Shown: positions 1 through 21,127 of the stretch, piece after piece
Position numbering within the stretch: the first letter of the stretch is position 1
How the letters are laid out: every line of letters begins with the position of its first letter
From: Octopus sinensis
Lineage: Eukaryota
Direction: 5' to 3'
Length of the DNA stretch: 21,127 nucleotides
Assembly: GCF_006345805.1 (NCBI RefSeq)
Contig: NW_021823808.1
Coordinates: forward strand, 1 to 21,127
Notes under the pieces: model-generated
Database searches by the model: none
The model's input: the letters and a program-made list of their open reading frames with translations, nothing else
Told to the model about the DNA's origin: nothing
Made by a program: the position numbers and the translations under genes

Positions 1-3000
1 CAAAAAGTACCAACACCAGTCCCTTCCTACCTAACAGACGCAAGAAATGTAACATATTACCCAAAACACCTAGATCGAGAAGGAGTCCTCTTCCCTTGAA
101 CCGGAACCCAATCCCCAGCTAACCAACGAAATGAGACAACTTGCTTCTCAGGTCACAGCTACCCAACTAAACAAAATAAAAGCCCAAATAAGCACATATC
201 AACTAATCAAACGTGGATTACCAATCCCTTCTGAGCTCTTAGATGATTTAGGAATCATAAACCCACTTGTATTCCTAAAAAATAATCACCACTAGAAAAT
301 AGATATGAACATATTATTAAAAGAGCGGGAAAATATGTAATATAATTTATCGATTTTTCAGAATTAAACAACAATTAAAATATCGATCGGAAAGTCTGGC
401 GGGAGTTTTGAACAGTCTTAGTGAGGACAATAAAATGAAGGCTTTGATCGAGTTGAAGGCGATTGGCCTGCTGGATCTCCAAAAGCACGTGCGGGAAGAA
501 GTGTTGTGTGTGATGAAGGAGTCCTGCCGAATTGAGGGACCTGCCTTTGGTCGTCGAGTCAAGAGACAAAGCCTCCGTGATTCCAGAATAACAGAAAGAA
601 TGGAAAAACATGAAAAAATGGAATCCGAGAGACTAAGAAGACAACAATTTTTAGTTAAAATGTAAAAATTCTGATTTTTAGGAATTTTTGGGGAGAATTC
701 AGCAACATCAAAGGCAATTCCGTGAAAATATGCGAATTCGAGCAACCAAACTGGGCAAAGTGAACAAGGCCGTGTTAAACCACCACCTGACGAATGAACG
801 AGAGCAAAAGAAAGAGGAGGATCGAATTCGGCGGGAAAGAATGCGTCGATTAATGGCAAATAAATAATTAAACACGTTTTTAGGAAGAGGATGAAGTGGG
901 GTACCGAAAGTTGATAGATCAAAAGAAGGACACCCGATTGAAATACTTGTTGGAACAAACGGACGAATATATAGGGAATATGGCCAAGTTATTGCAGTCC
1001 CACATGTGTGATCGGTCATTGGGGGAGGAAGGACAGGACTGTTATTCCATTGCTCATTTTAATCGAGAAAAGATTCAAGTCCAGCCTACAATCCTCACAG
1101 GCGGCACTTTGAAGTTGTATCAGATTGCTGGACTGGAGTGGATGGTGTCTCTTTATAACAACAATTTGAACGGTATTTTGGCAGATGAGATGGGTTTGGG
1201 CAAGACTATTCAGACTATTGCTCTTCTGGCCTATTTATTGGAACATAAGAGAATTCACGGTCCCCATTTGGTTGTGGTGCCCTTGTCGTAAGTGGTCGTG
1301 CTGATTGGAAGGACTTTGTCCAATTGGGTGAATGAGTTTGGTCGATGGGCACCTTCGATGGCTGTGGTGGCATATCGAGGGACCCCACAAGTGAGGAGGG
1401 AAGTCGGCTTAAGAATGAGATCTACAAATGTAAATGTGGTCATTACAACATATGATTATATCATAAAAGACAAAAATGTCCTTTCGAAGGTATCTTTTTT
1501 GACTAACAGGAAGATGAGGTGGGTTTATCTGGTCATCGATGAAGGACATCGTATGAAGAACCATCACTGTAAACTGACCAGTATTCTTTCCAGCAAATTC
1601 CATGTCCCCTACCGACTGCTTCTAACGGGGACTCCTCTGCAGAACCGTCTTCCTGAACTCTGGGCTCTTTTAAACTTTATTCAGCCGACAATATTTAAAT
1701 CCTGTGCCACGTTCGAGCAGTGGTTTAGTGCTCCATTTGCTAGTATGAATGAGCGGGTGGAACTTAACCAGGAAGAGTCACTTTTGGTAATTCGTCGACT
1801 CCACACGATTTTACGTCCATTTATCCTTCGAAGACTAAAAAAGGAAGTTGAATGTCAGTTGCCGGATAAAGTGGAATATATAATCAAATGTGCCCTCACT
1901 CCACTCCAGAGAATTATGTATACACATATGCAGAAGAATGGAGTAGTCCTCACATGTGATGAAAAGTCCAAAGTTGTTGGGAGGTCACTTTCTAATACTC
2001 TTATGCAATTACGGAAGATATGTAATCATCCTTTCATGTTTGAGTCGGTTGAAAAGTCGTTGGCACAGAAATTTGGAATGTCCAATGATATGGTCACTGG
2101 GCCTCTTCTTTTCCGTGTTTCGGGAAAATTTGAAGTCCTTGACAGAATATTGCCCAAATTGAAAGCAGTGAATCGAAAATGTCTTGTTTTTTGTCAAATG
2201 ACATCTTTAATGAATATTTTGGAGGATTATTTGAATATGAGGGATTTTTCTCACCTCAGATTGGACGGGTCTACCAAAGCTGAGGACAGGGAGTTCCTCT
2301 TGTCTCAGTTCAACGACCCCCAACTTGACACGTTTATATTCCTTCTGAGTACTCGGGCTGGTGGGTTGGGACTGAACTTACAAACTGCGGACACAGTGAT
2401 AATATTTGACTCTGATTGGAATCCCCATCAAGACCTGCAGGCCGAAGACAGAGCACATCGGATTGGGCAGCTCAGACAAGTCACAGTACTTCGTCTAGTC
2501 ACTGTTAATTCTGTGGAGGAAAGAATTCTTTCTGCTGCAAAGAATAAACTAAATATGGACGAGAAGGTCATTCGTGCTGGAATGTTTGACCAAAAGTCAA
2601 CATCCGATCAAAGAAGGCAATTCTTGCAGAGTTTATTGGATCAGGACGGAGATGAGGTTAAGGACGCTGATTCTATCCACGACGATGAAGCCATCAATGC
2701 TATGCTAATGAGGTCAAACGAGGAATATGAGTTGTTCACACAGATGGACTCCCAGCGTGAACAAATGGACAAACGTGACAATATTCCTTCAAGAGTAATC
2801 ACCGAGGATGAACTCCCCCTTTGGCTTGTTCATTCGTCTTATGAAAAAGTGAACTCGCCAATTTGGGAACATTCTTTCTCACGGAGACGGGCACAAGTTG
2901 AGGAGGAGGATTCGAGTTTCTCAGAGGATTATGTGCCCAGTAGACCAAAGAGAGCAGTCAAGCCAACCCAGAGGGATATTGGTCAGCTCTTGAACGATTT

Positions 3001-3325
3001 GTTGACATTTTTGATTGACTATCATGACGAGTAATGGTTTTAGTATAGTTAAGGGATGGCCGAGCATTGAGATTGATTGTCCTTTCCTGGAATTGCCATC
3101 GAGGAGAGAGTTGCCTGACTATTACGAGATTATTAAAAAGCCAGTGGACATAAAGCGGATTAAGGTGTTGGGTGTGTTGTATTGTAGAGTCGAATCAAGT
3201 TGAAGAAATACTTCATTGGAGGAGTTCTCTAAGGATGTTGTACTCATGTTTGAGAACGCCCAACTGTACAATATTGAGGAGTCTTTGATTTTGAGGATTC
3301 TGTTGAATTGTGTAAAGCATTCATT
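1..3325 (+). repeat. Long direct repeat, left copy (offset 17,804 bp to the right copy)
   Basis: Position 1 CAAAAAGTACCAACACC matches 17805. All ORF-track entries recur at +17804. Differences I found (not exhaustive): C147/G17951, T304/C18108, and indels near 3071-3080 (+5), 3210 (-2) and 3290 (-1). Confidence 0.99.
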
Positions 3326-3403
3326 CAAAAGAAAAATGAACTGAGTAGAGCTCAGTCTTTTCATGACATTCTCTATTTGATAATTTCATTCTTTGTTGAA
3401 TAA
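1..3403 (+). CDS. SMARCA4: Brahma/BRG1-type SWI/SNF ATPase, copy 1. The window cuts off the first ~10 codons, and the bromodomain exons are frameshifted in this copy.
   Basis: Spliced translation gives QLQ ([23 protein letters not shown]), HSA ([12 protein letters not shown]...RERMRRLM|[19 protein letters not shown]), SNF2 ATPase motifs ([50 protein letters not shown]), SnAC ([19 protein letters not shown]) and a bromodomain ([19 protein letters not shown]). Introns: 49-73, 269-295, 337-361, 654-681, 856-883 (GC-AG), 1288-1311, 1490-1513, 3031-3053, 3165-3187. The first stop after the bromodomain is TAA 3401-3403. Confidence 0.95.
856..883 (+). other. 28-nt GC-AG intron in Brahma (also 18660-18687)
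   Basis: The sequence is ATG|GCAAATAAATAATTAAACACGTTTTTAG|GAA. Removal restores [13 protein letters not shown], collinear with BRG1 RRLM-AEDEEGYRK. Retention gives TAA, and no GT donor is available nearby. Confidence 0.88.
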
Positions 3404-3919
3404 ATGAATTGTAGTGACCTCTATCGTCTGGGAGGTGTTATAAGATCATATTTTTGTGTAATTTGATGGATATGGTCAATGTTTAATACAGTGACTCTTC
3501 CAAATTAGCCCCCCTTTTAATGCTCATCTCTCTAATTAGCCACATCTTGAAAATTCTTTTGAGAAAAATTTATTTTTTAGCATTCGGTTAAGATTTTTTT
3601 AATGTATTTAAATTTATACAGAAAAAATAATTTTTTATGCATTTTACAGAACATGTATACTATGCAATCACGTTCTTCTTATGCCCGTCCTATTTTTGAT
3701 GAAAGATTGAAAATTTTGACATGCATTTTCTTCTGAATATCTTGGAGATTGATTTTCTTTGGTACTTCATTAAAAATATCTGGAATAAAAATTTTTTTTT
3801 AAAAGTATTTGCTCTTTAAAAAGTTTCTAGGTTAAGTATTTAATAATCTAATTCTTTAAACGCGAGAGGCTGATGCGATCGAGAAAGAGCTAGAGCGTAC
3901 TATCAATGAAATATCGCTT

Positions 3920-4004
3920 TTTAATGTTCGAATAGGCTAAAGATTGCTCGTAAGCCTTGATTTAAAGAGGCCAAGACAAAGTCCATTTCCACTCCGCAGA
4001 CCTC
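3920..4004 (+). repeat. ~85-bp dispersed copy of a segment inside EEA1 (16045-16128)
   Basis: TTTAATGTTCGAATAGGCTAAAGATTGCTCGTAAGCCTTGATTTAAAGAGGCCAAGACAAAGTCCATTTCCACTCCGCAGACCTC aligns in the same orientation with TTTAATATTCGAATAGGCTAAGATATGCTCATAAGCCGTGATTTAAAGAGGCCAAGACAAGTCCATTTCCACTCCGCAGACCTC. Confidence 0.9.
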
Positions 4005-4022
4005 TGGGAACCATAAAATAGG

Positions 4023-5200: not shown

Positions 5201-5365
5201 CACCACTAACAAAATTTAAACTCTGTAGACTTTTTCTATTTATATTATTAGTGTTTTTTATTTAACCAAAAGTTTGTTAATCGAAAAAAAATAAAAATTT
5301 AACATTAAACGCAATAAAGTTTAAATTAACAAAAGTATACTGTGACACAAACAAAGTAAAAAAAA

Positions 5366-5841
5366 ATAATGGCTTCTTTGTTCTTGTTTATTTTCAATGA
5401 TTTTGTCAAATCTTGGCACTTTTTGCTAATCGCAATACGAATGTCATGTTCAGGATTCAGGCGATTTCTGTATTTAGCTTTAATTTCCAAAAGAGAGCTG
5501 AATCCTGACTCGCATAAGTATGTCGTTGCAAATGGAATCAGTTCATACAAAGCCTTTTGAGATAATTTTGGATACATTTTCACTACTGAACTCCAAAATT
5601 GCTCCAATGTACAATTGTAAGACTCTATTTTAAGTGCTTTGTTTGTTCGAAGATCAATCAGATCTTCTTTGAGTTCATGATCATCTGACATAATTTTCAG
5701 ATTATACGAAAATGGACTCGAAATCCATTTATTCGTAATATTTAGATCCGTTCCGAAATATCCCCCAAAAGACGTGGATAATACTTCTAAATGAGATATA
5801 ACTTCTTGACGAAAAGTAAGATTCATTGAATTGTCGACCAC
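5366..5841 (-). mobile_element. hAT (Buster/Charlie, ZBED8/FAM200-like) transposase C-terminal remnant
   Basis: FWSSVVKMYPKLSQKALYELIPFATTYLCESGFSSLLEIKAKYRNRLNPEHDIRIAIS is the hAT dimerisation region. A frameshift at the T5 run 5420-5424 hides the typical end KVPRFDKIIENKQEQRSH. The 5' part is truncated. Confidence 0.9.
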
Positions 5842-5844
5842 CTT

Positions 5845-6239
5845 TTCTAATTCTGATTCAGATTTAAAAAACCTTGACTTTTTCCACAGAAACCAGCTTC
5901 GTTCCCTGAACCGCCTTACAAGATCAGCAACTCGGGACTAATTAGCCGGACATCGTCAATGGTCGCTAGAGGCTATTTGGACACATCTTGAAGATGGACC
6001 CAACTTCACCTCCCTATGTGACCATGAAAGAAAACTTCCTATCAGATGACGTAAAATTCCGAGGACGACCCATAACAACCCTACCGGTTGTTCTGCAACA
6101 CGACTTGAGGCTTTTAAAGAAAACCCTGAAGACCTGTGATGATCTCGACAATCTTCGGATACTGGCCCAAAACCGCAAAGATTTTTCTCTCAATATTTCC
6201 ACCTGCAATCGTATCATTCACAATCTGACATACAATTGA
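5845..6239 (+). mobile_element. 5'-truncated non-LTR retrotransposon (LINE) ORF2 C-terminal fragment
   Basis: The translation DLKNLDFFHRNQLRSL/PPYKISN.../GR*RLFGHILKMDPTSPP...FRGRPITTLPVVLQHDL...DLDNLRILAQNR matches the post-RT LDxFHRxQLR...RWxLFGHILR...RGRPxTT pattern of invertebrate LINEs. Confidence 0.75.
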
Positions 6240-6386
6240 TGGATTCGGCAAACAATTTAACGCATAAAAATTAATTAGATGATCCCTTATCCTCAAATTT
6301 GAATCAAAAAGTTTATCAGGTTCTAAGAATTGAATTTTTTTAATTTTAATAAAAAGAAAATATAATCTTAATAATAAAATGGTATG

Positions 6387-6554: not shown

Positions 6555-8190
6555 AAGAAAGAATATCCTCGATGATGAGGTCCCCAAAACTTCAAGTCAA
6601 TTTTCTGCGTTTTTGTTAAAATGAACAACAAGAAAGTCCTCGACTCACATGATGTGGTCCCCCAAAACCTTCAAGCCAAAAATTAAAAAAAATTATTTTC
6701 TGCGTTTTTGTTAAAATGAACAACAAGAAAGTCCTCGACTCACATGATGTGGTCTCCCCCAAAACCTTCAAGCCAAAAAATTAAAAAAAATTATTTTCTG
6801 CGTTTTTGTTAAAATGAACAACAAGAAAGTCCTCGAATCACATGATGTGGTCCCCCAAAACCTTCAAGCCAAAAATTAAAAAAAATATTTTCTGCGTTTT
6901 TGTTAAAATGAACAACAAGAAAGTCCTCGACTCACATGATGTGGTCCCCCAAAACCTTCAAGCCAAAAATTAAAAAAAATTATTTTCTGCGTTTTTGTTA
7001 AAATGAACAACAAGAAAGTCCTCGACTCACATGATGTGGTCCCCCAAAACCTTCAAGCCAAAAAATAAAAAAAATTATTTTCTGCGTTTTTGTTAAAATG
7101 AACAACACAAGAAAGTCCTCGACTCACATGATGTGGTCCCCCAAAACCTTCAAGCCAAAAAATTAAAAAAATTATTTTCTGCGTTTTTGTTAAAATGAAC
7201 AACAAGAAAGTCCTCGACTCACATGATGTGGTCCCCCAAAACCTTCAAGCTAAAAATTAAAAAAAAATATTTTCTGCGTTTTTGTTAAAATGAACAACAA
7301 GAAAGTCCTCGACTCACATGATGTGGTCCCCCAAAACCTTCAAGCCAAAAAATTAAAAAAATTATTTTCTGCGTTTTTGTTAAAATGAACAAGAAAGTCC
7401 TCGACTCACATGATGTGGTCCCCCAAAACCTTCAAGCTAAAAAATTAAAAAAATTATTTTCTGCGTTTTTGTTAAAATGAACAAGAAAGTCTCGACTCAC
7501 ATGATGTGGTCCCCCAAAACCTTCAAGCTAAAAAATTAAAAAATTATTTTCTGCGTTTTTGTTAAAATGAACAACAAGAAAGTCTCGACTCACATGATGT
7601 GGTCCCCCAAAACCTTCAAGGTAAAAATTAAAAAAAATTATTTTCTGCGTTTTTGTTAAAATGAACAACAAGAAAGTCCTCGACTCACATGATGTGGTCC
7701 CCCAAAACTTTCAAGCCAAAAAATTAAAAAAATTATTTTCTGCGTTTTTTTAAAATAAACAACAAGAAAGTCCTCGACTCACATGATGTGGTCCCCCAAA
7801 ACCTTCAAGCCAAAAAATTAAAAAATTATTTTCTGCGTTTTTGTTAAAATGAAAACACAAGAAAGTCCTCGACTCACATGATGTGGTCCCTCAAAACCTT
7901 CAAGCCAAAAAATTAAAAAAAATTATTTTCTGCGTTTTTGTTAAAATGAACAACAAGAAAGTCCTCGACTCACATGATGTGGTCCCTCAAAACCTTCAAG
8001 CCAAAAAATTAAAAAAATTATTTTCTGCGTTTTTGTTAAATGAACACAAGAAAGTCCTCGACTCACATGATGTGGTCCCCCAAAACCTTCAAGCCAAAAA
8101 TTAAAAAAAAATATTTTCTGCGTTTTTGTTAAAATGAACGACAAGAAAGTCCTCGACTCACATGATGAGGTCCTCCACAACCTTCAAGCC
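6555..8190 (+). repeat. Tandem satellite array, ~17 copies of a ~95-bp unit
   Basis: The unit is TTTCTGCGTTTTTGTTAAAATGAACAACAAGAAAGTCCTCGACTCACATGATGTGGTCCCCCAAAACCTTCAAGCCAAAAATTAAAAAAAATTAT. CTGCG recurs at 6605, 6700, 6798, 6892, 6987, 7082, 7179, 7274, 7369, 7461, 7551, 7645, 7740, 7833, 7930, 8025 and 8118. Confidence 0.98.
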
Positions 8191-8907
8191 TCGTGAGGCC
8201 ATTAATTAGCTTAGCTATCTTTTTTCGATGACATAAATTCTTTTTTGTTAAATTTTCGTTAAAAAAATAAAATAAAAGCTCTAATTGTTATCGACCATGA
8301 ATAGACTGTGCAATTATCAGATTTTGAAAACCACTAAAAGGAAAAAGCAAAAAATTATTAGAGATTTACATAATTGATTCTTTTTAACTGCGCGAAACTG
8401 ACAAATTCGATTATGCTACTGTTTAGATTTCTTAAAAGATAGAGGCAAATAAAATTTAAATTAGTCATGTAAATTTCAATTTGCCTATATTTAAATCTCC
8501 TTGATTTAACAGGCTTTAATTTTTTTCCTTATAATACTACAAAGATGAAGCTGATTATCATTTTCTTTACCGAAACAGACAAGTTCGATTATGCTAAAGT
8601 TTCAATTCCTTTAAACATAGAGGCAATTAAGTATAATGGCTTTGATTGGATAATACACTTTACATAAATTTCACTAAATACATTACGTAGAAAATTTAAT
8701 ATAAATTACTGATTCGCGTTTACAAAATCATAAGAATGTCCTATAAAGAGAGATCTGAGAATGTAACAAACAAGAGAATATGAACCATATAACAAAAAAA
8801 GAGAAACGAGGGAAGATGTGCTTAAATGGTGAGGGAACTTAGACAACAGCTGAACAAGGTCAGGACTGCTGTTAGACTCAACTACGGGTAATAGAATTAT
8901 GCATTCT

Positions 8908-9707
8908 AGGTTAATTGTTTGGGATGAATGTACGATGGCTCATAAAGGCGCATTCAAGCAGTTGACCGAACATATAGAGATATCAAGAATGTAGCGACCA
9001 TTTGTTTGGGGGAGCATTAGTTGTATTGGCAGGTGATTTTAGACAGACGCTGCCAATTATTCAAAGAGGGACGCCTGCGGATGAATTGAATGCCTGCCTC
9101 AAATCGTCATATTTGTGGACACACGTGAAAAAGGTAAGCTTAGATGTAAATGTACATGCACATTTACAAGGCGTTAATAGCATATTCCCACAATCCTTCT
9201 AGATATTGGAAATGGGGCAATCACTTCAGAAATGCACGACCAGAAAATTAGGCTACCGGAAGAATTATGTATTTTCGTAGAGAAACAGCAGAAGAATTAT
9301 TGAATGCCGTCTATTCCGAACTATCTGAACACTACGTGAATTTCGACTGGCTGCGTGAACGAGCTATATTAGCTCCACTTAATGATGAGGTACTTAATAT
9401 AAATTTAGATTTATTAATGAAAATCCCTGGCAGAGAAAGAATATATAAATCGGTCGACGTTATTATGGACCATGAAAGGGCCTGCGATAGATTTAAGAGA
9501 CTACAATTTCCGCTGAAGATAAGTTTTGCTATGACAATAAACAAGGCCCAGGGACAGTCTTTAAAGGTAGTAGGCTTATTTTTAGAGAACGAGTGCTTTT
9601 CACATGGCCAGCTGTATGTGGGGTGCTCAAGGGTAGGTAGAAGAGAAATTTATTTATATTTGCCAAGGATGGACGGACTGCAAACATCGTTTATCCACAG
9701 GCCTTAG
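8908..9707 (+). pseudogene. Helitron PIF1-family helicase remnant
   Basis: Motifs seen: RLIVWDECTMAHK (Walker B), [32 protein letters not shown] and [29 protein letters not shown]...[15 protein letters not shown]. There are frameshifts near 8955-9000 and ~9200-9265, and an internal deletion near 9480. Confidence 0.93.
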
Positions 9708-9771
9708 AATAAGGTTATATCAAAGCAGGTCGCATTTATATATCTACATAAATTTATAGTTATTTAAGGAA

Positions 9772-9841
9772 ACTGCGAGCGTAGCGAGCAGGGCCTCCGC
9801 AGGAGCTAGCTCGCAGTGAGCGAAGCGAACTGCTGAGCTAG
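9772..9841 (+). terminator. Helitron 3' subterminal hairpins and CTAG terminus
   Basis: ACTGCGAGC (9772-9780) pairs with GCTCGCAGT (9809-9817). GCAGT (9813-9817) can instead pair with ACTGC (9829-9833). CTAG occurs at 9806-9809 and 9838-9841. Confidence 0.8.
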
Positions 9842-9878
9842 TTTGCTTATAATAAAAATAAATTTAAAAACAACAAAA

Positions 9879-11275
9879 TCATTCAACAACTATCTTCTGC
9901 ATTTTGGCTACAAACGCATCCAATTTCTTATATAGGGAAATCCTTAATATCAATAAAAAACCAAAAAAACATTTTTTAGTCGACTTTAATTCTCATGTTC
10001 ATATCTGAGTTCAAATCCTGAACCATTCTGTCCAATTCAACTCCATCAATTTCAAACAAAGTCATAAAATTACTACAAATATATAAACATTGTGTCAAAC
10101 AAACTTTATCGACAAACAAGACATTATTTTTAGCATTCTCTTCAAAATAACTGACAAGAATATTTATAAACAAATCTGCAAAATTACTCATGAAATAATC
10201 CAATTTTATGATCTGAAAATTTATTAAAAAACAAATCAACTTCCCGACAATCCTCGAGGTCCCTTGCGATCGAAATCAAATCCAAATCCCCCACCAACCT
10301 AAGCACAAACAAGGACGCACAATCCTTGTCCACCATTTGCTTCTAATACTCAAAAAACACAAAAATAACAATCAGTTCAAAAGGACGTTCAAAATTGTCG
10401 TCATTTCGAGACACAACAACAGCCAAATAACAAACCAAATAAGGCGACCGACTCACAATACCAAAAAAACTAATCATCAGTCACTTCCATCAACCTGCTC
10501 TCAAAAACAGCTCACAAAAAACTGGGAGTGACTCAACAGAACGGAAATAAACAAACAACGACCAATTCAGCATCCACAAATGATCAGTAATGCCTTCACA
10601 AGACTGATTTTTGACTAACCTTATCCACAACCCAAACCTGTGATAAAACCGCTCCAATTCAGCCAAGTGGGTCTCAGCCCGACTGAAGTTACCCAAAAGA
10701 ACCGCACAGCACAACTTACCCCAAAACCTTCACAAACCGGCCAGAATCGACATAAAGCATCTAAAACACGTGCAAAGAACCTACTAGTGGATGAAGTAAC
10801 TCCAATTAGAGGTAGGCCTCCTCGTATTTTCCAATATCGAACTTGAATTGGACAAACTCAAAGGCAAAGCACAACAAATTGGGGAAATCAGTCTAAAAAT
10901 AGTCACAAAATGGCTACATCAAATTCCGACTGCAATCTGCTGAAAACCATGCTGGGGACTCTAAAATTGATGGGTTGATAAGATCACGTGCTGCCGTTGA
11001 TTTCGCTCTTGAATTTGGAAATGGCCGCAATAGGGGACCGAAGGACTTTTCGTTCGAGGAGAGTACGTGCTAATTTTTTCACGTTTTTCAAGTAATTCTA
11101 ATAAAATATTTGAATTAGTGGAACCATGTGGGACTGTTTCAGTGTTGTGTACTATTTTGTAGTATTCAATCTCGTCGTCTATTCCGTGGGTTTTTGACAG
11201 TAATTCGAGAATGGAGAATTCATATCTGATTTTTGTATATCTTTTTAAGATTATAAAAATATTTTGATAATACAT
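9879..11275 (-). CDS. EIF3E: Eukaryotic translation initiation factor 3 subunit E (INT6), divergent, with apparent lesions; 5' end uncertain
   Basis: The spliced and frame-corrected translation is collinear with eIF3e: ILELLSKTHGIDD; VPH|ELLEKREK; FVQFKFDIGKYEEA; WGKLCCAVLLGNF; HLWMLNWSLFVYF; SPYLVCYLAVVV; DCRE|IIKLDYF; MRIKVD; SLYKKLDAF...VVE*. Tiny introns include GTTCCACTAATTCAAATATTTTATTAG and GTAGCCATTTTGTGACTATTTTTAG. There is an in-frame TAA at 10806-10808 and several 1-2 nt indels. Confidence 0.85.
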
Positions 11276-11679
11276 AACTTTCACGTTAATTTATTATTTT
11301 TTAATATTATAATTATATAAAATTAACAAAATTATAGAGTTTTGTAGATGTTTTTGGACGTTTAGTCTGATTATCAGAACTATATAAATCTTATTTAAAA
11401 TTAATGTTACATGCCATCAAATGCTATTTTTCGTCCCTTCTACCTTTCGTATTTTAAATGACAGCGTAGTATTCATGAAGGCAATAAAATGTGCATATTC
11501 ACAAATGGGTCAAAAATATTTACTTGATTTCGAAGAGATACATGTCAAGCAGTAAGATTTGGTCCTCTGTAAAATGACCTCCTCGATTTTAATCTCCATT
11601 GGTATCTTTATCCTGAAATGGACAGCTATGAAAGAATTTTCTTTGACATTAATGTGATTGATTATTCATTGAAATATTT

Positions 11680-12050
11680 CCATGTCTCCGGCTATCCAAA
11701 ATTTAAGAAGGACGAGTTTTTGTGGACATGACGGAATTTCTATAATTTTGTTAAAAAACCTTGGGCAAGTAGCAATAGCAGCCCTGGTTCAAATCTATAA
11801 TTCCTTAATAAACAACAATTCAATACCTACCATTTAGAAAATTGCTCACATTTGCACTATCCTGAAATCGGGAAAGCCTAGATACGACCCATCGTCAGAC
11901 AGACCAATTTTCCTCCTTTGCGTAGTATCTAAAGCTCTGGAAAAAACTGGTACTCAAACGAGTCAAACAATTATTTCTTCATTTGAATTTCCAACATAGA
12001 TTCAAAAGTGGGAAATCTACGGCTTGGCTTTTACCAGGCTGATTAACTTA
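11680..12050 (+). mobile_element. Degenerate non-LTR retrotransposon reverse-transcriptase fragment (Jockey/I-like, RT domains 0-2)
   Basis: The translation is AIQNLRRTSFCGHDGISIILLKNL...IYNSLINNNSIPTI*KIAHICTILKSGKPRYDPSSDRPIFLLCVVSKALEK/...FQHRFKSGKST. Confidence 0.88.
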
Positions 12051-12711: not shown

Positions 12712-13504
12712 TCATAGTCTGTTTGAGAAGTTTTTGTTTACTGGCTTTATATAGTAAAAAATAAGACCATAATTTGCTATTACAAGCAAAATAATCATAA
12801 CAAATGAAACATGAATAATCCAACTCGGCACGGACTTTAAATTCTTACATTCAAATAGTTGCTCCACATCGACATAAAAAGCCCCGTCTACAAATTTAGA
12901 ATTAATAAAATACAATGTCGTAAATATCCCGACAAGTACTAAACCTCAGTTTATTCAATTTTTCCAATTGAGGCAGACATTTAGTGCAAAATGATTTATT
13001 CGGTGGTGGGAGTTGTCCATATAAATATTTCTTTTTGAAATAAAATTTTAAAACAACCCAAGCTGTGGCTCCGTCCAACATTTTGAAAGATTTGTTGATA
13101 ACTTTACAAATGTTTTATAAGTTTCTGAAACTTGTCCATTGAATAGCAATCTAATTTGACAATATAAGTAAACCTTCGCAAAATGCAGTATCCCAAATAT
13201 TAATTACTGTGTTGATTGAGAGTTGGACGTAGTCGTAGGTGATTCCACGGTAAACAACAGAGTGACCACAGTTTTCCACAATCTAGTAGTCAAAAGAATA
13301 TTTAAATGCCATTTTTCCTCTAAGTTTTTGCACTTTAGAAAGCAAATTTTTGCAGTCAATGCAAATGCTAAAAGGACGAGAATATTTTCCAGCACAATCC
13401 ATAAAGAACCCCAACTCTTGGCTGTAGTTTACAAGAAGCTTGTAACATGTCGATTTATCAGAACTGAGTGCATAGCCTATTAAAACGATCGTCAAGACAA
13501 GCAT
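12712..13504 (-). CDS. OSTM1: Osteopetrosis-associated transmembrane protein 1 (ClC-7 beta subunit)-like, with apparent indels
   Basis: It has a signal peptide MLVLTIVLIGYALS, then TCYKLLVNYS...DCAGKYSRPFSICIDC (OSTM1 CxxLL...C...ARP..LC..C), ENCGHS...IWDTAFCE|DC, FCTKC, (LC)VDVE, FEC and a C-terminal TM helix. Introns are at 13283-13309 (GC-AG) and 13151-13173. Confidence 0.78.
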
Positions 13505-13703
13505 TGCGGTAAAGTTTTGAAATAATTTATTAATGAAATCCAATTATTTTTAAGATTAATTTTATTTTGTAATTTTTTAAATTACTAAATATAAAGGTTT
13601 TAATTAGAATATGATAAACCTTGAATAAAAAATAATATTTTATCGCAAAAAAAACTTTCGTAACAATAAAAACCAAAACCTAAAAAGTTAAATTAAGAAT
13701 TAT

Positions 13704-14326
13704 TTATATCAGAAAGATTGCTAAAATATTTTCCAATGAATTCATCTGATCCTTCGAAATATAAATTGTGGGTCGTTTTATTTCAAAAACTCCACTGCCT
13801 CTTCAGGTCTCATCCCAAGACGCTAAAAAAACTCACAAAAAATACTTTCATAAGATAACAACAAACAACTGTTGCACTTCTCGACTTTCCAGCCTTACAG
13901 TGCACATAGACACGAGTTTTTGACTCAAAATAATTCATGATAAAATCGACTGATTTTTCCAAATCAGACATTGAGGGCGAAGGTCCCATGTCAATAGTGG
14001 GGACTCTCAATCTTTCTATTCCAAGACTTTTAATGGTCTGTCAATAAATATTTAAGAATTACTTTAGAACTCGGACTGGTTAAGTATAACTCATAATCTT
14101 GACAGAGGCAGACAATTCCGTGAATGTTATAAGAAGGAATTAACTTTTTTATTACGTTAAAAATTACTTCATTAACAATAAGTTTTTTTGAAGGCAAGGC
14201 TCCTAATATAACACATTCGTCCACTACGCTGTACCACGTGGTTAATAAAAGTTTTTTGAGTAATTTGTTGTATAGTAAAGTCGGGAGGAATGATACATAT
14301 GCTAAAGATTGTCTTAAAATAAACAT
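13704..14326 (-). CDS. PTPMT1: Mitochondrial phosphatidylglycerophosphatase / dual-specificity phosphatase PTPMT1
   Basis: Motifs seen: FLPTLLY, WYSVVDECVILGALP, LGIERLRVPTIDM and the catalytic VYVHCKAGKSRSAT. Introns are at 14144-14167, 14038-14062 and 13823-13845. One missing base at 13781-13783 restores KRPTIYISKDQM. Confidence 0.93.
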
Positions 14327-14522: not shown

Positions 14523-17500
14523 TTATTCGTTTAAATAAAATATGTCAATAATATTCTCTGGTTGTGGATTCCTCTTACTTTTGATGGTGTTATAACATTG
14601 GTCACACAAACACGTTGATTTTTCGAAGCAGCTGCCAACTGAAGTCTACCTGTAGTACACGCAGCGCAGAATATGGCTCCACAACTACGACAATGATGCT
14701 ACCCGATTAAATACTCCTCTAACCTTCCTTACTGTCAGAGAAAAGACTATTTTACAATTAGCACACAGTCGACAATCCTTATCCGAATGCCACTGAGTGT
14801 TGGATACTCGATTGGCGATTATCTAAATGTTTTGGTCACTCCATGTGCCTGAAGGGACGAGTTTTCCGAGGCCAATTCACGGATTCCGGTGGTCAGATCA
14901 ACGTTTTTGAGTTTCATTGCTAACAACTGTTCTCTGGTCTCTTCGTCCCGTTCTTCAATCTTGAGATACCTGAGATTCCTTATATTAATACTACTCTTTC
15001 ATTAGCAGGTCATTCGACTCTAATTGAGTCCTTAACTGCTTTTCCAGATCTGACCAGTCAGTCAACACACAACAACCTTCTTTCTCGTTTGTTTGAATTT
15101 GTAGTTTGTCTAAGCTTATTTTGAGTGAATTGGTTGATTGTGTCAGCTCGAAGTTTAATTTTGTGATTGAATTGCAATTTTCGTCATATTTTTCCTGCAA
15201 ATCAGCATTTTGTACTAAAAGACAGTCAATTTCCTGTTTTCTAGATATATGAACAGCGTCGGCTTGGTTAATGTAGTTCTAAGTATTATAAAATAGTATT
15301 TATAACCTTAAAAACTGAATTTAAATATTTAAAACGATTCAAAACATCGAACAAATAGCATTTAATGTGTTCTCCCCTGTCAGCTGACTCCAAACACAGT
15401 TTTTTCAGTTCGACTGATCCAAATGCAGCCTTTCGGCATTGACAATCAAATTTATTAGAAAGAGACGATTCTTCTCGGTTTTTGCTTCCCAAATCCTAAT
15501 CTGACTGGACTGTGATGAACATTTTAATATCAATTTTTGTTGCGTCAATTTAAAGTTTTGTAAACTTTTTTGTGTAATTCGAATCACTCAAATCCATCAT
15601 TCTGAGACACTCGTAAAACTTGCCAATTGATTCGACAATTTGTTTCAACAAAAGTAGCAAATTAGAATGCTTGTCCAACGTTCTTAATTGAGCACGAACG
15701 GAAAACACGAAATCGTCATTTTTTCAATAATTGAAGTTTTGAAATGCAAAAGTCTCGATTCTCGACATTGTCAATTCAGTCTGATTCATTAATATCCGGA
15801 TTCGTCGATTACAGTTAATTACTGGCACAAGAAGACTGACAAGAATCGAATCAATCTCATCTCGATGGCAAACCAGCCTGCCACGTGTCTCATCAACCAA
15901 TCCTTTTAGGCCAATAACTTCATCTTTCCAAAAATTCCAAGACCCAATTTTCACTTTATTCACTCTAAGGGAGTGCCCAATTATCAGATTCTTTAAAACT
16001 TGTAAATTTTGACTCATTGAACACTGATTGGCCTCCGCAACTTGTTTAATATTCGAATAGGCTAAGATATGCTCATAAGCCGTGATTTAAAGAGGCCAAG
16101 ACAAGTCCATTTCCACTCCGCAGACCTCGCAAGTTCAATTTGCCGTATAGAATGAGCAAATGTGGCAATTTCCTCGCTTGTGATTTGAAATGAGACGATA
16201 TTAATAGTTTTGTGGTGGTCATCTCTTCACGAATTAAACTGGCTGTCCTTTTAATGACTCTCCAGACAATTTCGACTTTCTCCTGTTGATTGTACAACTC
16301 AGAATAATTGAATCAAGCGTGTTTTTGGACGAACGAAGCGAAGTGGCGAGTTTTGGGAGGAAAGTTCGGATTAAACTCATTTTTTGCTCAAGATCACAAA
16401 ATGTCGACATTTTTTGGCCAAGGTTGGCATTTTCTTGTTCGGTAAAACTAATTTGTTTGGTCAAATCTTCAATCTATGTAAATAAAGCACGTTTTATTCA
16501 ACTTGACAGGAGTATTCCAGTTCCTTGCATTTCATAGCTTCGTCAAAAGCCGCGGTTTGTTCGATATTCATAATTCGGGCTGCCTCGACTTTATTTAAAA
16601 GTTTTTCCTAACAAGAATAAACGACTTTCCGACCTGTTCTGTCCTGAGGTAGTCGATCGTGACTCGAGACGTCTCATCCGTCCCCGCCGACTGAACAAAA
16701 AAAGAAATTTGAGTCTCAAGTTGTCCAATCTGACCAAAAAGTGTCTCATTTTTTTATAAAAAGTCTAAAAATCAGTCCAAACTGGGGACACCTTCTTGAA
16801 ATAGTAGTCATACTCTGAATATTGGAGACTGTTGACAAAAAACATTTAATAATCCATTTAACAAACATAAATGAATTAGAAAACAAGTTTTTTTGATAGT
16901 ATTTGTGTTATTGTCAAGTCTTTTCTTAACGAAATTGCAAGTTTTTGTGATTTTTTGATATATTTTTGCATGTTTTGGGCCAATTTATTAACCCGACTTT
17001 TTGAAACTTCAATACAAGTTGATTTGGCGTGTTTTTTCATCAAATCAAGTTTCTCTCTGCAATATTCACTCAAATCTGCCTGCTCTTGTTTAAATTGTGT
17101 CAAATCTGCTTTGATCTACTAATATAATACATTAAAAAAACAAAATTCAATTTTTTGATGTGCTTTTCTCTGAAAAGTGCCGATTCTGCTCTTAATTTTT
17201 GACATTCTTGTTCCAAGTTGGATTTATCTTTTTCCAACTGTTTGTTTATTAGTTGAAGGCTATCAATTTGTTGTTGCATCAAATTTTTGTCGTCGGTCAA
17301 CAATTCTTGTTGTCCATTCTAATATATATATATTTGAGGACTTGATGGGTTGAAAAGTGAACTGATAATTCTTCGCAAGTATCAAAATTCTCAAAACATG
17401 AAGGGCAGACAAATCCTCGGAGGTCATTATTTGTGGATAATTCGTCTTGTGTTGGTTTTTTGTCCGCGTTTTTACCCTTTTTTTAAATATTTGTAAACTT

Positions 17501-17526
17501 ACTGAAAGGCGTATTAGTTTTCTCAT
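14523..17526 (-). CDS. EEA1: Early endosome antigen 1-like (C2H2 zinc finger - coiled coil - FYVE), with apparent indels
   Basis: The N-terminus is MRKLIRLS|GK...GFVCPSCFENFDTCEELSVHFSTH, followed by a long heptad-rich region. The C-terminus is ELASENSSLQ|IIANRVSNTQWHSDKDCRLCANCKIVFSLTVRK|HHCRSCGAIFCAAC...QRVC/DQCY. Tiny introns include 17477-17502, 14823-14848 (GC-AG) and 14699-14723. Internal exon boundaries are only partly resolved. Confidence 0.88.
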
Positions 17527-17774
17527 TAGAATTCAAACAATTAAATTTTATTATTTATTAACAAATTGTTTCTAAATAAATAAGTTTATGATATAATTAA
17601 TTAAATATTTTTCATTATATTAGATTTAAATTAATGTTTTTTAATAGAATAAAAATGAATATTTACTATAAAATAATCAATAAATAAAAATTAATTTTTT
17701 TAATTATTAAATGATTATTTCAAATAATTAAATAAACATATATTATTTAATAATACACGTTCATTGTGGTTGGA
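17527..17774. promoter_or_regulatory. Putative bidirectional promoter between EEA1 (-) and Brahma (+)
   Basis: This 248-bp spacer lies between two divergent ATGs and is almost devoid of G and C. The promoter function is inferred from position only. Confidence 0.6.
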
Positions 17775-20700
17775 ATGATTTATACTTCTCAGCCCGATAT
17801 TGCCCAAAAAGTACCAACACCAGTCCCTTCCTACCTAACAGACGCAAGAAATGTAACATATTACCCAAAACACCTAGATCGAGAAGGAGTCCTCTTCCCT
17901 TGAACCGGAACCCAATCCCCAGCTAACCAACGAAATGAGACAACTTGCTTGTCAGGTCACAGCTACCCAACTAAACAAAATAAAAGCCCAAATAAGCACA
18001 TATCAACTAATCAAACGTGGATTACCAATCCCTTCTGAGCTCTTAGATGATTTAGGAATCATAAACCCACTTGTATTCCTAAAAAATAATCACCACTAGA
18101 AAATAGACATGAACATATTATTAAAAGAGCGGGAAAATATGTAATATAATTTATCGATTTTTCAGAATTAAACAACAATTAAAATATCGATCGGAAAGTC
18201 TGGCGGGAGTTTTGAACAGTCTTAGTGAGGACAATAAAATGAAGGCTTTGATCGAGTTGAAGGCGATTGGCCTGCTGGATCTCCAAAAGCACGTGCGGGA
18301 AGAAGTGTTGTGTGTGATGAAGGAGTCCTGCCGAATTGAGGGACCTGCCTTTGGTCGTCGAGTCAAGAGACAAAGCCTCCGTGATTCCAGAATAACAGAA
18401 AGAATGGAAAAACATGAAAAAATGGAATCCGAGAGACTAAGAAGACAACAATTTTTAGTTAAAATGTAAAAATTCTGATTTTTAGGAATTTTTGGGGAGA
18501 ATTCAGCAACATCAAAGGCAATTCCGTGAAAATATGCGAATTCGAGCAACCAAACTGGGCAAAGTGAACAAGGCCGTGTTAAACCACCACCTGACGAATG
18601 AACGAGAGCAAAAGAAAGAGGAGGATCGAATTCGGCGGGAAAGAATGCGTCGATTAATGGCAAATAAATAATTAAACACGTTTTTAGGAAGAGGATGAAG
18701 TGGGGTACCGAAAGTTGATAGATCAAAAGAAGGACACCCGATTGAAATACTTGTTGGAACAAACGGACGAATATATAGGGAATATGGCCAAGTTATTGCA
18801 GTCCCACATGTGTGATCGGTCATTGGGGGAGGAAGGACAGGACTGTTATTCCATTGCTCATTTTAATCGAGAAAAGATTCAAGTCCAGCCTACAATCCTC
18901 ACAGGCGGCACTTTGAAGTTGTATCAGATTGCTGGACTGGAGTGGATGGTGTCTCTTTATAACAACAATTTGAACGGTATTTTGGCAGATGAGATGGGTT
19001 TGGGCAAGACTATTCAGACTATTGCTCTTCTGGCCTATTTATTGGAACATAAGAGAATTCACGGTCCCCATTTGGTTGTGGTGCCCTTGTCGTAAGTGGT
19101 CGTGCTGATTGGAAGGACTTTGTCCAATTGGGTGAATGAGTTTGGTCGATGGGCACCTTCGATGGCTGTGGTGGCATATCGAGGGACCCCACAAGTGAGG
19201 AGGGAAGTCGGCTTAAGAATGAGATCTACAAATGTAAATGTGGTCATTACAACATATGATTATATCATAAAAGACAAAAATGTCCTTTCGAAGGTATCTT
19301 TTTTGACTAACAGGAAGATGAGGTGGGTTTATCTGGTCATCGATGAAGGACATCGTATGAAGAACCATCACTGTAAACTGACCAGTATTCTTTCCAGCAA
19401 ATTCCATGTCCCCTACCGACTGCTTCTAACGGGGACTCCTCTGCAGAACCGTCTTCCTGAACTCTGGGCTCTTTTAAACTTTATTCAGCCGACAATATTT
19501 AAATCCTGTGCCACGTTCGAGCAGTGGTTTAGTGCTCCATTTGCTAGTATGAATGAGCGGGTGGAACTTAACCAGGAAGAGTCACTTTTGGTAATTCGTC
19601 GACTCCACACGATTTTACGTCCATTTATCCTTCGAAGACTAAAAAAGGAAGTTGAATGTCAGTTGCCGGATAAAGTGGAATATATAATCAAATGTGCCCT
19701 CACTCCACTCCAGAGAATTATGTATACACATATGCAGAAGAATGGAGTAGTCCTCACATGTGATGAAAAGTCCAAAGTTGTTGGGAGGTCACTTTCTAAT
19801 ACTCTTATGCAATTACGGAAGATATGTAATCATCCTTTCATGTTTGAGTCGGTTGAAAAGTCGTTGGCACAGAAATTTGGAATGTCCAATGATATGGTCA
19901 CTGGGCCTCTTCTTTTCCGTGTTTCGGGAAAATTTGAAGTCCTTGACAGAATATTGCCCAAATTGAAAGCAGTGAATCGAAAATGTCTTGTTTTTTGTCA
20001 AATGACATCTTTAATGAATATTTTGGAGGATTATTTGAATATGAGGGATTTTTCTCACCTCAGATTGGACGGGTCTACCAAAGCTGAGGACAGGGAGTTC
20101 CTCTTGTCTCAGTTCAACGACCCCCAACTTGACACGTTTATATTCCTTCTGAGTACTCGGGCTGGTGGGTTGGGACTGAACTTACAAACTGCGGACACAG
20201 TGATAATATTTGACTCTGATTGGAATCCCCATCAAGACCTGCAGGCCGAAGACAGAGCACATCGGATTGGGCAGCTCAGACAAGTCACAGTACTTCGTCT
20301 AGTCACTGTTAATTCTGTGGAGGAAAGAATTCTTTCTGCTGCAAAGAATAAACTAAATATGGACGAGAAGGTCATTCGTGCTGGAATGTTTGACCAAAAG
20401 TCAACATCCGATCAAAGAAGGCAATTCTTGCAGAGTTTATTGGATCAGGACGGAGATGAGGTTAAGGACGCTGATTCTATCCACGACGATGAAGCCATCA
20501 ATGCTATGCTAATGAGGTCAAACGAGGAATATGAGTTGTTCACACAGATGGACTCCCAGCGTGAACAAATGGACAAACGTGACAATATTCCTTCAAGAGT
20601 AATCACCGAGGATGAACTCCCCCTTTGGCTTGTTCATTCGTCTTATGAAAAAGTGAACTCGCCAATTTGGGAACATTCTTTCTCACGGAGACGGGCACAA

Positions 20701-21127
20701 GTTGAGGAGGAGGATTCGAGTTTCTCAGAGGATTATGTGCCCAGTAGACCAAAGAGAGCAGTCAAGCCAACCCAGAGGGATATTGGTCAGCTCTTGAACG
20801 ATTTGTTGACATTTTTGATTGACTATCATGACGAGTAATGGTTTTAGTATAGTTAAGGGATGGCCGAGCATTGATTGATCCTTTCCTGGAATTGCCATCG
20901 AGGAGAGAGTTGCCTGACTATTACGAGATTATTAAAAAGCCAGTGGACATAAAGCGGATTAAGGTGTTGGGTGTGTTGTATTGTAGAGTCGAATCAAGTT
21001 GAAGAAATATACTTCATTGGAGGAGTTCTCTAAGGATGTTGTACTCATGTTTGAGAACGCCCAACTGTACAATATTGAGGAGTCTTTGATTTTTGAGGAT
21101 TCTGTTGAATTGTGTAAAGCATTCATT
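17775..21127 (+). CDS. SMARCA4: Brahma/BRG1-type SWI/SNF ATPase, copy 2. It has an intact frame from the ATG, and the window end cuts off the last ~25 codons.
   Basis: ATG 17775 ([14 protein letters not shown]...) is in frame. Removing the same nine introns (227 nt: 17853-17877, 18073-18099, 18141-18165, 18458-18485, 18660-18687, 19092-19115, 19294-19317, 20835-20857, 20964-20986) leaves 3126 nt, which is 1042 open codons. These include an intact bromodomain [23 protein letters not shown]...K|[29 protein letters not shown]. Confidence 0.96.
17805..21127 (+). repeat. Long direct repeat, right copy
   Basis: It matches 1-3325. The final ATTCATT at 21121-21127 aligns with 3319-3325, and the offset falls to 17,802 after the three indels. 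Confidence 0.99.

What the first reader, a model, noticed from the sequence alone, without database searches (positions are those of the whole stretch)
1..21127. 17.8-kb unit with five housekeeping genes repeats head-to-tail: tandem duplication or gene-bearing circle
Seen: 1-3325 recurs at 17805-21127 with near identity, and both window ends fall inside Brahma. Joining the overlap gives a closed ~17.8-kb unit with complete Brahma, eIF3e, OSTM1, PTPMT1 and EEA1. Inference: if the window is a whole contig, this terminal redundancy is what long-read assemblers produce from a circular template or a collapsed tandem array. Gene-bearing extrachromosomal circles are reported for some reduced animals (dicyemids; recalled, not checked). 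It could also be an ordinary segmental duplication or a mis-join of two haplotypes, which the two substitutions would fit.
Basis: partly seen in the sequence, partly recalled or inferred. Interest (0 to 1): 0.7.

Follow-up and report, generated by a model that had tools for sequence, protein, structure and literature searches.

The report
Self-overlapping 17.8-kb gene-bearing draft contig
The window looks like one whole, error-prone long-read contig from a tiny-intron animal (dicyemid-like) whose two ends overlap by 3.3 kb, so a 17.8-kb block of ordinary nuclear genes and transposon debris lies head-to-tail, but the sequence alone cannot say whether that is a tandem repeat, a free DNA circle or an assembly error.

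Summary
Bases 1-3325 recur at 17805-21127 with a period of about 17,802-17,804. The copies differ by 2 substitutions and 4 small indels, and both window ends lie inside one Brahma/SMARCA-type gene.

The unit is ordinary nuclear DNA with 17-28 nt GT-AG introns. This fits a dicyemid best; the organism is absent from every searchable collection. Besides Brahma, eIF3e, OSTM1, PTPMT1 and EEA1, about 37-45% of the unit is repeat debris: a hAT fragment, a broken PIF1/Helitron-like helicase, a 1.6-kb 95-bp satellite and a short dispersed repeat.

The sequence is a draft. PTPMT1 and EEA1 carry homopolymer frameshifts. Three of the indels between the copies frameshift Brahma in the internal copy only. 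All six differences lie within 304 nt of a window end (P about 4e-5). So the window is probably a whole contig, and the two copies are the same DNA read twice. They are not diverged paralogues and not two haplotypes.

My ranking:
- Recent or polymorphic tandem head-to-tail repeat: 0.4
- Assembly artefact on a single-copy locus: 0.3
- Free circle: 0.2

Only reads or wet-lab tests can decide. Interest is modest.

The parts
1..3325 (+). Copy A of the terminal repeat. It is the Brahma gene from codon 11 to 78 nt before its stop.
   Evidence: aligns to 17805-21127 with 2 substitutions and 4 indel events.
17805..21127 (+). Copy B of the terminal repeat. It is cut off by the window end.
   Evidence: this copy keeps the bromodomain exons in frame.
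17775..21127 (+). Brahma/SMARCA2-4-like SNF2 ATPase gene, 5' end and body (copy B). It has about 8 mini-introns of 23-28 nt. It continues in copy A to the stop at 3401-3403.
   Evidence: best hits are SNF2L2/BRG1/brm at 57-65% identity. tblastn; gene models; ATG; 3' exons.
3069..3289 (+). Cluster of four indel differences (+2, +3, -2, -1 nt) that frameshift the Brahma bromodomain exons in copy A only. Probably consensus errors.
   Evidence: The contexts are TTGA slippage, an AT dinucleotide and a T-run. There is no substitution in this stretch.
3917..4004 (+). 90-bp dispersed repeat, copy 1. Copy 2 is at 16041-16128 inside the EEA1 gene body, 92% identical.
5329..5937 (-). 203-codon stop-free frame with a hAT transposase C-terminal dimerisation domain (transposon fragment).
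   Evidence: PF05699, 23.3 bits against a cut-off of 21.4.
6600..8190 (.). 95-bp satellite with 16.8 copies, monomers 92-100% alike. It is preceded by a (TGTC)n run at 6388-6430.
8854..9704 (+). PIF1-like (Helitron-type) helicase remnant, broken into at least 4 reading frames.
   Evidence: PF05970, 87 bits on the joined pieces.
9772..9842 (+). GC-rich palindromes ending in CTAG, followed by T-rich DNA. This may be the 3' end of the Helitron-like element.
   Evidence: Calling it a Helitron end rests on recalled knowledge and was not tested.
9976..11275 (-). eIF3e gene. The N-terminal third is only roughly modelled.
   Evidence: frames and introns; the PDB eIF3e chains are the only hits, E = 1.4e-5.
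11573..12040 (+). Possible non-LTR retrotransposon reverse-transcriptase fragment. Identified by motif only; not confirmed.
   Evidence: open frames; no Pfam hit. This is a tentative call from recalled motifs.
12712..13543 (-). OSTM1-like gene, with a signal-peptide-like start and a C-terminal membrane helix. The exon structure is approximate.
   Evidence: 20.6 bits on one exon. PF09777, 31.5 bits against a cut-off of 25.8.
13704..14326 (-). PTPMT1 gene. It has a frame break in the T5 run at 13785-13789.
   Evidence: the alignment to mouse PTPMT1 (3rgo, E = 4.5e-26) continues across the break.
14523..17526 (-). EEA1-like gene with an N-terminal C2H2 finger, a coiled coil and a C-terminal FYVE domain. 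It has a frame break in the A5 run at 14619-14623. The middle part is unresolved.
   Evidence: best PDB hit is the EEA1 FYVE domain (1joc, E = 4.5e-14), aligned across the break; middle part not modelled.
17527..17774 (.). 248-bp AT-rich spacer between the divergently oriented EEA1 and Brahma start codons.

Best explanation
The window is a complete, draft-quality long-read contig from the nuclear genome of an animal with ultra-short introns, most like a dicyemid. The assembler walked about 1.19 times round a closed path, so the first and last 3.3 kb are the same DNA read twice. The few differences between them are consensus errors, with perhaps one or two allelic SNPs.

I think the most likely template is a very recent, near-identical head-to-tail tandem repeat of a 17.8-kb chromosomal segment, with two or more copies. 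It may be present in only some of the pooled genomes. Its junction-spanning reads could not be placed on a single-copy path and collapsed into this flankless contig.

Shown: the repeat, the gene content, the draft quality, and the clustering of differences at the window ends. Inferred: that the window is a whole contig, that the DNA really is head-to-tail, and that it is a tandem repeat and not a circle.
For: -: a 3,325-nt direct terminal repeat. Its central 2,764 nt are 100% identical.
- all six differences lie within 304 nt of a window end (P about 4e-5). This is expected if the window ends are real contig ends.
- the indels sit in slippage or homopolymer contexts, and three of them break a conserved reading frame in one copy only.
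- the same type of homopolymer frame break occurs in unique PTPMT1 and EEA1, and homology continues across each break. The sequence is therefore an unpolished long-read consensus.
- there are no Ns in the window.
- the gene structure runs smoothly across both repeat boundaries. The repeat is limited by the window ends, not by a duplication breakpoint.
- From established knowledge: missed-adapter or MDA chimeras give inverted joins, not direct ones. A direct head-to-tail layout over 21 kb normally needs reads from tandem or circular DNA. Chromosomal tandem duplications are far commoner than stable gene-bearing circles.
Against: - No reads, depth, assembly graph or contig header are available. 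Whether the window is a whole contig is inferred only.
- At the 3' side the in-frame copy is the terminal one (B) and the frameshifted copy is the internal one (A). This is the opposite of the simple expectation that contig ends carry the errors. It remains unexplained.
- A two-copy chromosomal duplication should usually assemble with its flanks when reads are long.
- No junction or breakpoint can be recognised inside the unit.
- The organism is identified only by intron size, GC content (35.7% against 36.7% for D. japonicum) and a long branch among Spiralia (PMC13644364, PMC6736024).
Confidence: 0.4

Rival explanations
1. Assembly artefact on a single-copy linear locus. A false join closed the path. 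It could have come through one of the repeats in the unit (the 95-bp satellite or a transposon fragment), from a chimeric read in a low-coverage leftover contig, or from a step that merges assemblies or haplotypes.
For: - About 37-45% of the unit is repeat or uncharacterised DNA, including a 1.6-kb satellite of 92-100% identical monomers.
- The stochastic indel errors suggest few reads or no polishing.
- The likely source genome is 49% repeats. It was built by merging Platanus and Falcon assemblies and then running HaploMerger (PMC6736024).
- The error cluster at 3069-3289 lies in the internal copy, which could mark a seam between merged pieces.
Against: - The redundancy is in a unique gene, not in the repeats. 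A repeat-induced break would leave repeat sequence at the contig ends.
- The satellite is fully traversed and shows no seam.
- Long reads of 10 kb or more span every repeat in the unit.
- A random ligation chimera would rarely rejoin two points only 18 kb apart (inference).
Confidence: 0.3
2. A free extrachromosomal circle of about 17.8 kb that carries the five nuclear genes and the transposon block. It would have been excised or amplified from the chromosome, for example during the somatic genome rearrangements described for dicyemids.
For: - The contig is closed and has no flanks.
- The differences between the copies look technical.
- Dicyemids are reported to form extrachromosomal circles and to amplify DNA selectively (Noto 2003 and Awata 2006, as cited in PMC6543705).
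Against: - Known dicyemid circles are 0.3-2 kb (median about 700 bp), and the only protein domains found on them are mitochondrial (PMC6543705, section 6). This unit is more than 20 times larger and carries nuclear genes.
- An abundant circle should give deep coverage and a clean consensus, unlike this draft. This argument is weak if the contig was never polished.
- The unit shows no element that could serve as a replication or segregation function.
- The prior for a stable circle carrying essential single-copy genes is low.
Confidence: 0.2
3. Two alleles of one heterozygous locus were placed one after the other (a haplotype mis-join or false tandem duplication).
For: - The copies differ by two substitutions, one of them non-synonymous.
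- The candidate source genome is highly heterozygous and passed through a haplotype-merging step (PMC6736024).
Against: - Only 2 substitutions occur in 3,325 nt. About 41 are expected at 1.24% heterozygosity, or about 8 at one-fifth of that rate (P = 0.011).
- The central 2,764 nt are identical.
- The copies are a full 17.8-kb unit apart, with unique sequence between them, and are not adjacent.
Confidence: 0.07
4. An ordinary older segmental duplication inside a larger chromosome-scale sequence, from which the window happened to be cut.
For: The sequence shows only that the 3.3-kb segment occurs twice.
Against: - Divergence is about 0.06% and the differences are dominated by indels.
- The differences cluster at the window ends (P about 4e-5), which an arbitrary cut would not produce.
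- The window length of 21,127 is not a round number, which suggests it was not cut to a fixed length.
Confidence: 0.03

Closest known systems
Terminal-overlap ('circular-looking') contigs that long-read overlap assemblers produce from circular or tandemly repeated templates (own knowledge)
   Same: It has a direct repeat at the two contig ends shorter than one read, near-100% identity, residual differences concentrated near the ends, and no unique flanks.
   Different: Such contigs are usually organelle genomes, plasmids, rDNA or satellites. This one carries single-copy-type nuclear genes with spliceosomal introns. At the 3' side the terminal copy is the cleaner one.
Small circular DNAs of dicyemids (Noto et al. 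2003; Zverkov et al. 2019, PMC6543705)
   Same: The likely host group is the same, and the circularity is inferred from terminal direct repeats of assembled contigs.
   Different: Those circles are 0.3-2 kb. They are non-coding or carry single mitochondrial genes, and they share a circle-specific motif. This unit is 17.8 kb and carries five nuclear genes plus transposon debris. The motif could not be tested because it is given only in a figure.
Gene-bearing eccDNA or ecDNA amplicons in other eukaryotes, such as yeast gene circles, the Amaranthus EPSPS replicon and tumour ecDNA (own knowledge)
   Same: If circular, it would be a chromosome-derived circle of tens of kb carrying complete genes.
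   Different: There is no evidence here for circular topology, raised copy number or selection.
Recent tandem segmental duplication
   Same: The arrangement is head-to-tail, the identity is near-perfect, and the gene structure continues across the repeat boundary.
   Different: Only 1.19 units are visible. No second complete copy, junction or chromosomal flank is seen.
False duplications in assemblies of heterozygous genomes (own knowledge; the HaploMerger step is cited in PMC6736024)
   Same: It is a small redundant piece in what is probably a merged, haplotype-reduced assembly.
   Different: The copies are far too similar for the reported heterozygosity, and they are separated by 14.5 kb of unique sequence.

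Membership tests
Self-overlapping (cyclic-path) assembly contig | Direct repeat occupying both ends of the sequence | tested here: met
   1-3325 = 17805-21127, reaching base 1 and base 21127.
Self-overlapping (cyclic-path) assembly contig | The copies are the same template, so differences are technical and not evolutionary | tested here: met
   2,764 nt are identical and the indels sit in slippage contexts; the same error type occurs in the unique genes.
Self-overlapping (cyclic-path) assembly contig | The window is the entire contig | tested here: inconclusive
   Indirect only: differences cluster within 304 nt of the window ends (P about 4e-5) and the length is not round. The source record could not be found.
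Extrachromosomal circular DNA | Covalently closed circular topology (exonuclease resistance, reads longer than one unit without flanks) | not testable with these tools
   No reads or wet-lab data are available.
Extrachromosomal circular DNA | Copy number differs from that of chromosomal single-copy genes | not testable with these tools
   No depth information is available.
Dicyemid small circular DNAs (PMC6543705) | Size about 0.3-2 kb (main pool 600-800 bp) | tested here: not met
   The unit is 17.8 kb.
Dicyemid small circular DNAs (PMC6543705) | Non-coding, or carrying only mitochondrial genes | tested here: not met
   The unit has five nuclear genes with spliceosomal mini-introns and no tRNA or rRNA.
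Dicyemid small circular DNAs (PMC6543705) | Circle-specific 12-20 bp sequence motif | not tested
   The motif appears only in Figure 5 of the paper, which is not held as text.
Tandem segmental duplication | Two or more full copies joined head-to-tail, with chromosomal flanks | tested here: inconclusive
   Only 1.19 units are visible, with no flank and no recognisable junction.
Organelle, plasmid or viral genome | Organellar, prokaryotic or viral gene content | tested here: not met
   The content is eukaryotic nuclear genes and transposon remnants only. There are no Rfam or tRNA hits, and the sequence is absent from the viral, metagenome and prokaryote collections.
Helitron carrying captured genes (rolling-circle transposon) | Intact Rep/helicase ORF, and element ends that bracket the captured genes | tested here: not met
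   Only a helicase remnant in at least 4 broken frames is present, and no Rep domain was found. The putative CTAG 3' end at 9842 abuts the eIF3e 3' end and is not joined to a 5' end.

The most novel reading that the evidence does not exclude
The unit is a real 17.8-kb extrachromosomal circle, or a selectively amplified head-to-tail amplicon, of a dicyemid. It would carry five nuclear housekeeping genes, be more than 20 times larger than any circle described for these animals, and be the first with nuclear protein-coding genes. This would tie the reported somatic genome rearrangement or amplification to defined gene-bearing DNA.
Probability: 0.17. Interest if true: 0.7.

Novelty: new member of a known kind. 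Interest (0 to 1): 0.3.

Why it matters
If the head-to-tail arrangement is real, it gives a defined, PCR-testable locus for asking whether dicyemids, or a similar reduced parasite, amplify or excise gene-bearing chromosomal DNA. Until now this has been discussed only for sub-2-kb non-coding and mitochondrial circles.

If it is an artefact, the contig should be flagged in the source assembly for three reasons:
- It duplicates 3.3 kb of Brahma.
- It carries frame-breaking consensus errors in at least three genes.
- It would inflate gene counts or create false pseudogenes.

Either way, the window is a clear example of genes with 17-28 nt introns.

Tried and rejected
- I looked for the source record or same-species data. 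An exact-protein look-up of the 580-aa Brahma ORF found nothing. A concatenated query of the less conserved genes gave no hit at E <= 0.001. The best Brahma hits reached only 57-65% identity. A 48-nt exact pattern was absent from the viral, metagenome and prokaryote contig collections. The organism is therefore not in any searchable collection, and no independent contigs could be used to test adjacencies.
- Noto et al. 2003 is not held. No paper on a long-read dicyemid genome was found.
- I wrote three gene modellers: longest open path through GT-AG mini-introns, a version weighted by codon bias, and a frameshift-tolerant version. They worked for Brahma but chose wrong frames in the AT-rich genes. 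The eIF3e N-terminus, the OSTM1 exons and the middle of EEA1 remain approximate. I did not use the extra frameshifts these models proposed as evidence.
- Pfam scans of the putative LINE fragments and the unresolved middle of EEA1 gave nothing.
- I looked for a seam in the satellite array that might mark a false join or a recombination junction. The monomers are uniformly 92-100% alike.
- I looked for other internal repeats that could define a junction. Only a 90-bp pair and a weak 60-bp pair turned up.
- I considered and rejected a mitochondrial, plasmid or viral genome, and a Helitron with captured genes (see the membership tests).
Full report
**1. The observation**

A local alignment of the two window ends and the repeat finder agree. 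Bases 1-3325 recur in direct orientation at 17805-21127, reaching the first and the last base of the window.

The copies differ by two substitutions: 147 C/G and 304 T/C. They also differ by four small indel events, all between 3069 and 3289 of copy A. Copy A has an extra GA and an extra TTG, lacks an AT, and lacks one T of a T-run. The central 2,764 nt are identical. The period is 17,804 at the 5' side and 17,802 once the indels are netted. A 3.3-kb repeat of this identity is far beyond chance.

**2. What the unit contains**

The window holds no Ns and is 35.7% G+C. Its content runs as follows.

- **Brahma (+ strand).** A Brahma/SMARCA2-4-type SNF2 ATPase starts at an ATG at 17775, runs off the window end in copy B, and ends in copy A at the stop at 3401-3403. 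The best database hits are SNF2L2/BRG1/brm at 57-65% identity. tblastn and gene models are.
- **Repeat block (3404-9975).** This contains:
  - one copy of a 90-bp dispersed repeat (3917-4004; the second copy is at 16041-16128);
  - an open frame with a hAT dimerisation domain (5329-5937, minus strand);
  - a (TGTC)n run;
  - a 95-bp satellite of 16.8 copies (6600-8190);
  - a PIF1-like, Helitron-type helicase remnant split over at least four frames (8854-9704);
  - GC-rich palindromes ending in CTAG (9772-9842).
- **Four genes on the minus strand.**
  - eIF3e at 9976-11275. The only PDB hits are eIF3e chains.
  - An OSTM1-like gene at about 12712-13543 (PF09777 above its cut-off).
  - PTPMT1 at 13704-14326 (mouse PTPMT1, E = 2e-24).
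  - An EEA1-like gene at 14523-17526, with an N-terminal C2H2 finger, a coiled coil and a C-terminal FYVE domain. The best PDB hit of the FYVE domain is EEA1 itself.
- **Spacer.** EEA1 and Brahma diverge from a 248-bp spacer.

No tRNA or Rfam family is present. Genes take about 52% of the unit, the repeat block 37%, and a further 8% (11276-12699) is uncharacterised, with a possible reverse-transcriptase fragment. So the unit is an ordinary piece of a repeat-rich nuclear genome. It is not a compact cassette of housekeeping genes.

**3. The organism**

All well-supported introns are GT-AG and 17-28 nt long. One is probably a 28-nt GC-AG intron.

According to PMC13644364, introns this short are known in animals only from myxobolid myxozoans and from the dicyemid Dicyema japonicum. 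Three points favour a dicyemid:
- D. japonicum has 36.7% G+C, 49% repeats and 1.24% heterozygosity (PMC6736024). Henneguya has 29% G+C.
- The Brahma protein is a long branch that joins the fast-evolving spiralians, not the cnidarian, in a simple NJ tree.
- No myxozoan protein appears among the best hits.

This assignment is likely but not proven. The organism is absent from the protein collection and from the three DNA collections.

**4. The sequence is a draft with indel errors**

- In PTPMT1 the reading frame changes inside a T5 run (13785-13789). No GT-AG intron is possible there. The alignment to mouse PTPMT1 continues straight across the break.
- In the FYVE exon of EEA1 the same happens in an A5 run (14619-14623). 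The alignment to human EEA1 restores the conserved SKK...CDxC motif only if one base is missing from the assembly.

These are the classic residual errors of an unpolished long-read consensus.

The differences between the two Brahma copies are of the same kind: TTGA slippage, AT against ATAT, and T4 against T5. Copy B translates without a break into conserved bromodomain sequence:

...[82 protein letters not shown]...

Copy A is thrown out of frame three times within 220 nt, and that stretch contains no substitution. Natural decay would not produce that pattern. Consensus noise would.

**5. The window is probably a whole contig and the copies are one template**

All six differences lie within 304 nt of one or the other window end. 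If they were spread at random over the 3,325-nt overlap, the chance of that is about 4e-5 (2e-4 if the two adjacent indels count as one event). An arbitrary cut from a longer sequence would not produce this. True contig ends, where the consensus is built from few reads, would.

Together with the odd length (21,127) and the perfect central identity, this means the assembler ran about 1.19 times round a closed path. Gene structure is continuous across both repeat boundaries. The extent of the repeat is therefore set by the contig ends, not by a duplication breakpoint.

One detail does not fit. At the 3' side the terminal copy (B) is the correct one and the internal copy (A) carries the errors. 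This could reflect a seam between tiled or merged reads, or polishing reads that all mapped to the cleaner copy. I could not test either idea.

**6. What is excluded or disfavoured**

- **Old segmental duplication:** excluded in practice. There is no substitutional divergence in 2.7 kb.
- **Haplotype mis-join:** disfavoured. About 41 substitutions would be expected at 1.24% heterozygosity, or about 8 at one-fifth of that rate. Only 2 are observed (P = 0.011 at the lower rate). The copies are also a full unit apart.
- **Organelle, plasmid or virus:** excluded by content.
- **Helitron carrying captured genes:** not supported. The helicase is a remnant, no Rep domain was found, and the putative 3' end abuts eIF3e and not a 5' end.
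- **Known dicyemid circles:** these are 0.3-2 kb, and the only protein domains found on them are mitochondrial (PMC6543705). The unit does not belong to that class.

**7. What remains**

Three readings survive, and the sequence cannot separate them.

- **(a) A real head-to-tail tandem repeat in the chromosome.** It would be very recent, possibly polymorphic or somatic in the pooled animals, and collapsed by the assembler. I rate it 0.4. Direct head-to-tail layouts normally need real tandem or circular reads, and tandem duplication is the commonest such structure.
- **(b) An artefact on a single-copy locus.** I rate it 0.3. The contig is low quality, the genome is repeat-rich, and the probable source went through assembly merging and haplotype reduction. 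Against it, the redundancy lies in a unique gene, and the only long repeat is traversed without a seam.
- **(c) A free circle.** I rate it 0.2. It fits the flankless closed contig and the reported biology of dicyemids. It has a low prior for essential nuclear genes, nothing in the unit could serve for replication or segregation, and there is no topological evidence.

The remaining 0.1 goes to the haplotype mis-join and old-duplication readings.

**8. Verdict**

The inference of a cyclic assembly path gains support, and two of the four alternatives are weakened, but circle against tandem array stays open.

As it stands, the finding is an assembly-level signature on an ordinary gene-and-transposon segment, so its interest is modest. 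It would become notable only if reads or bench tests showed a gene-bearing circle or amplicon.

Noticed in passing
window 17853-17877, 18073-18099, 18141-18165, 18458-18485, 19092-19115, 20835-20857, 20964-20986; also 10213-10240, 10343-10369, 13823-13845, 14038-14062, 14699-14723, 17116-17141, 17319-17341: The spliceosomal introns are only 17-28 nt long (mostly 23-28), GT-AG, often starting GTA. This is the ultra-short intron class reported only for dicyemids and myxobolid myxozoans.
   Followed up: partly
window 18655-18682 (equivalent to 851-878): The Brahma intron here is best explained as a 28-nt GC-AG intron (GCAAAT...TTTTTAG). That keeps the conserved ...[14 protein letters not shown]... 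sequence. The GT-AG alternative of 43 nt deletes conserved residues.
   Followed up: no
window 13785-13789 and 14619-14623: There are single-base frame breaks in a T5 run (PTPMT1) and an A5 run (EEA1 FYVE exon). Homology continues across both, so they are likely consensus deletions and not real pseudogenisation.
   Followed up: yes
window 6600-8190 (and 6388-6430): A 95-bp satellite has 16.8 copies that are 92-100% alike and differ mostly in A-run length. It is preceded by a (TGTC)n microsatellite and lies next to a Helitron-like helicase remnant, so it may be internal to that element.
   Followed up: partly
window 8854-9704 and 9772-9842: A PIF1-like helicase remnant sits in at least 4 frames. 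It is followed 70-140 nt downstream by GC-rich palindromes ending in CTAG, which resembles a Helitron 3' terminus. This lies only about 130 nt from the eIF3e stop codon.
   Followed up: partly
window 3917-4004 and 16041-16128: A 90-bp dispersed repeat (92% identical, same orientation) has one copy downstream of Brahma and one inside the EEA1 gene body, in the part of EEA1 that could not be modelled.
   Followed up: partly
window 15300-16240: The middle of the EEA1-like gene has long open frames that do not chain through GT-AG mini-introns, including an in-frame TGA at about 15725. This could mean more consensus errors, an insertion, or real decay.
   Followed up: partly
window 17527-17774; also 13544-13703 and 14327-14522: The gene spacing is very compact. 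A 248-bp AT-rich divergent spacer separates the EEA1 and Brahma start codons. Spacers of only about 160-200 nt separate the tandem minus-strand genes OSTM1, PTPMT1 and EEA1.
   Followed up: no
window 5970-6236 (+) and 11573-12040 (+): Open frames here have motifs that I recall from non-LTR retrotransposons (RGRP...-type tail; ...QHRFKSGKST... reverse-transcriptase motif). Pfam gave no hit, so the call is tentative.
   Followed up: partly
window 10001-11000: There is strong strand asymmetry (GC skew -0.31, AT skew +0.28) over the eIF3e gene. The sense (minus) strand is G- and T-rich.
   Followed up: no
window 147 / 17951: The one coding substitution between the copies changes Ser to Cys just upstream of the QLQ-like motif of Brahma. 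It could be an allelic SNP or an error.
   Followed up: no
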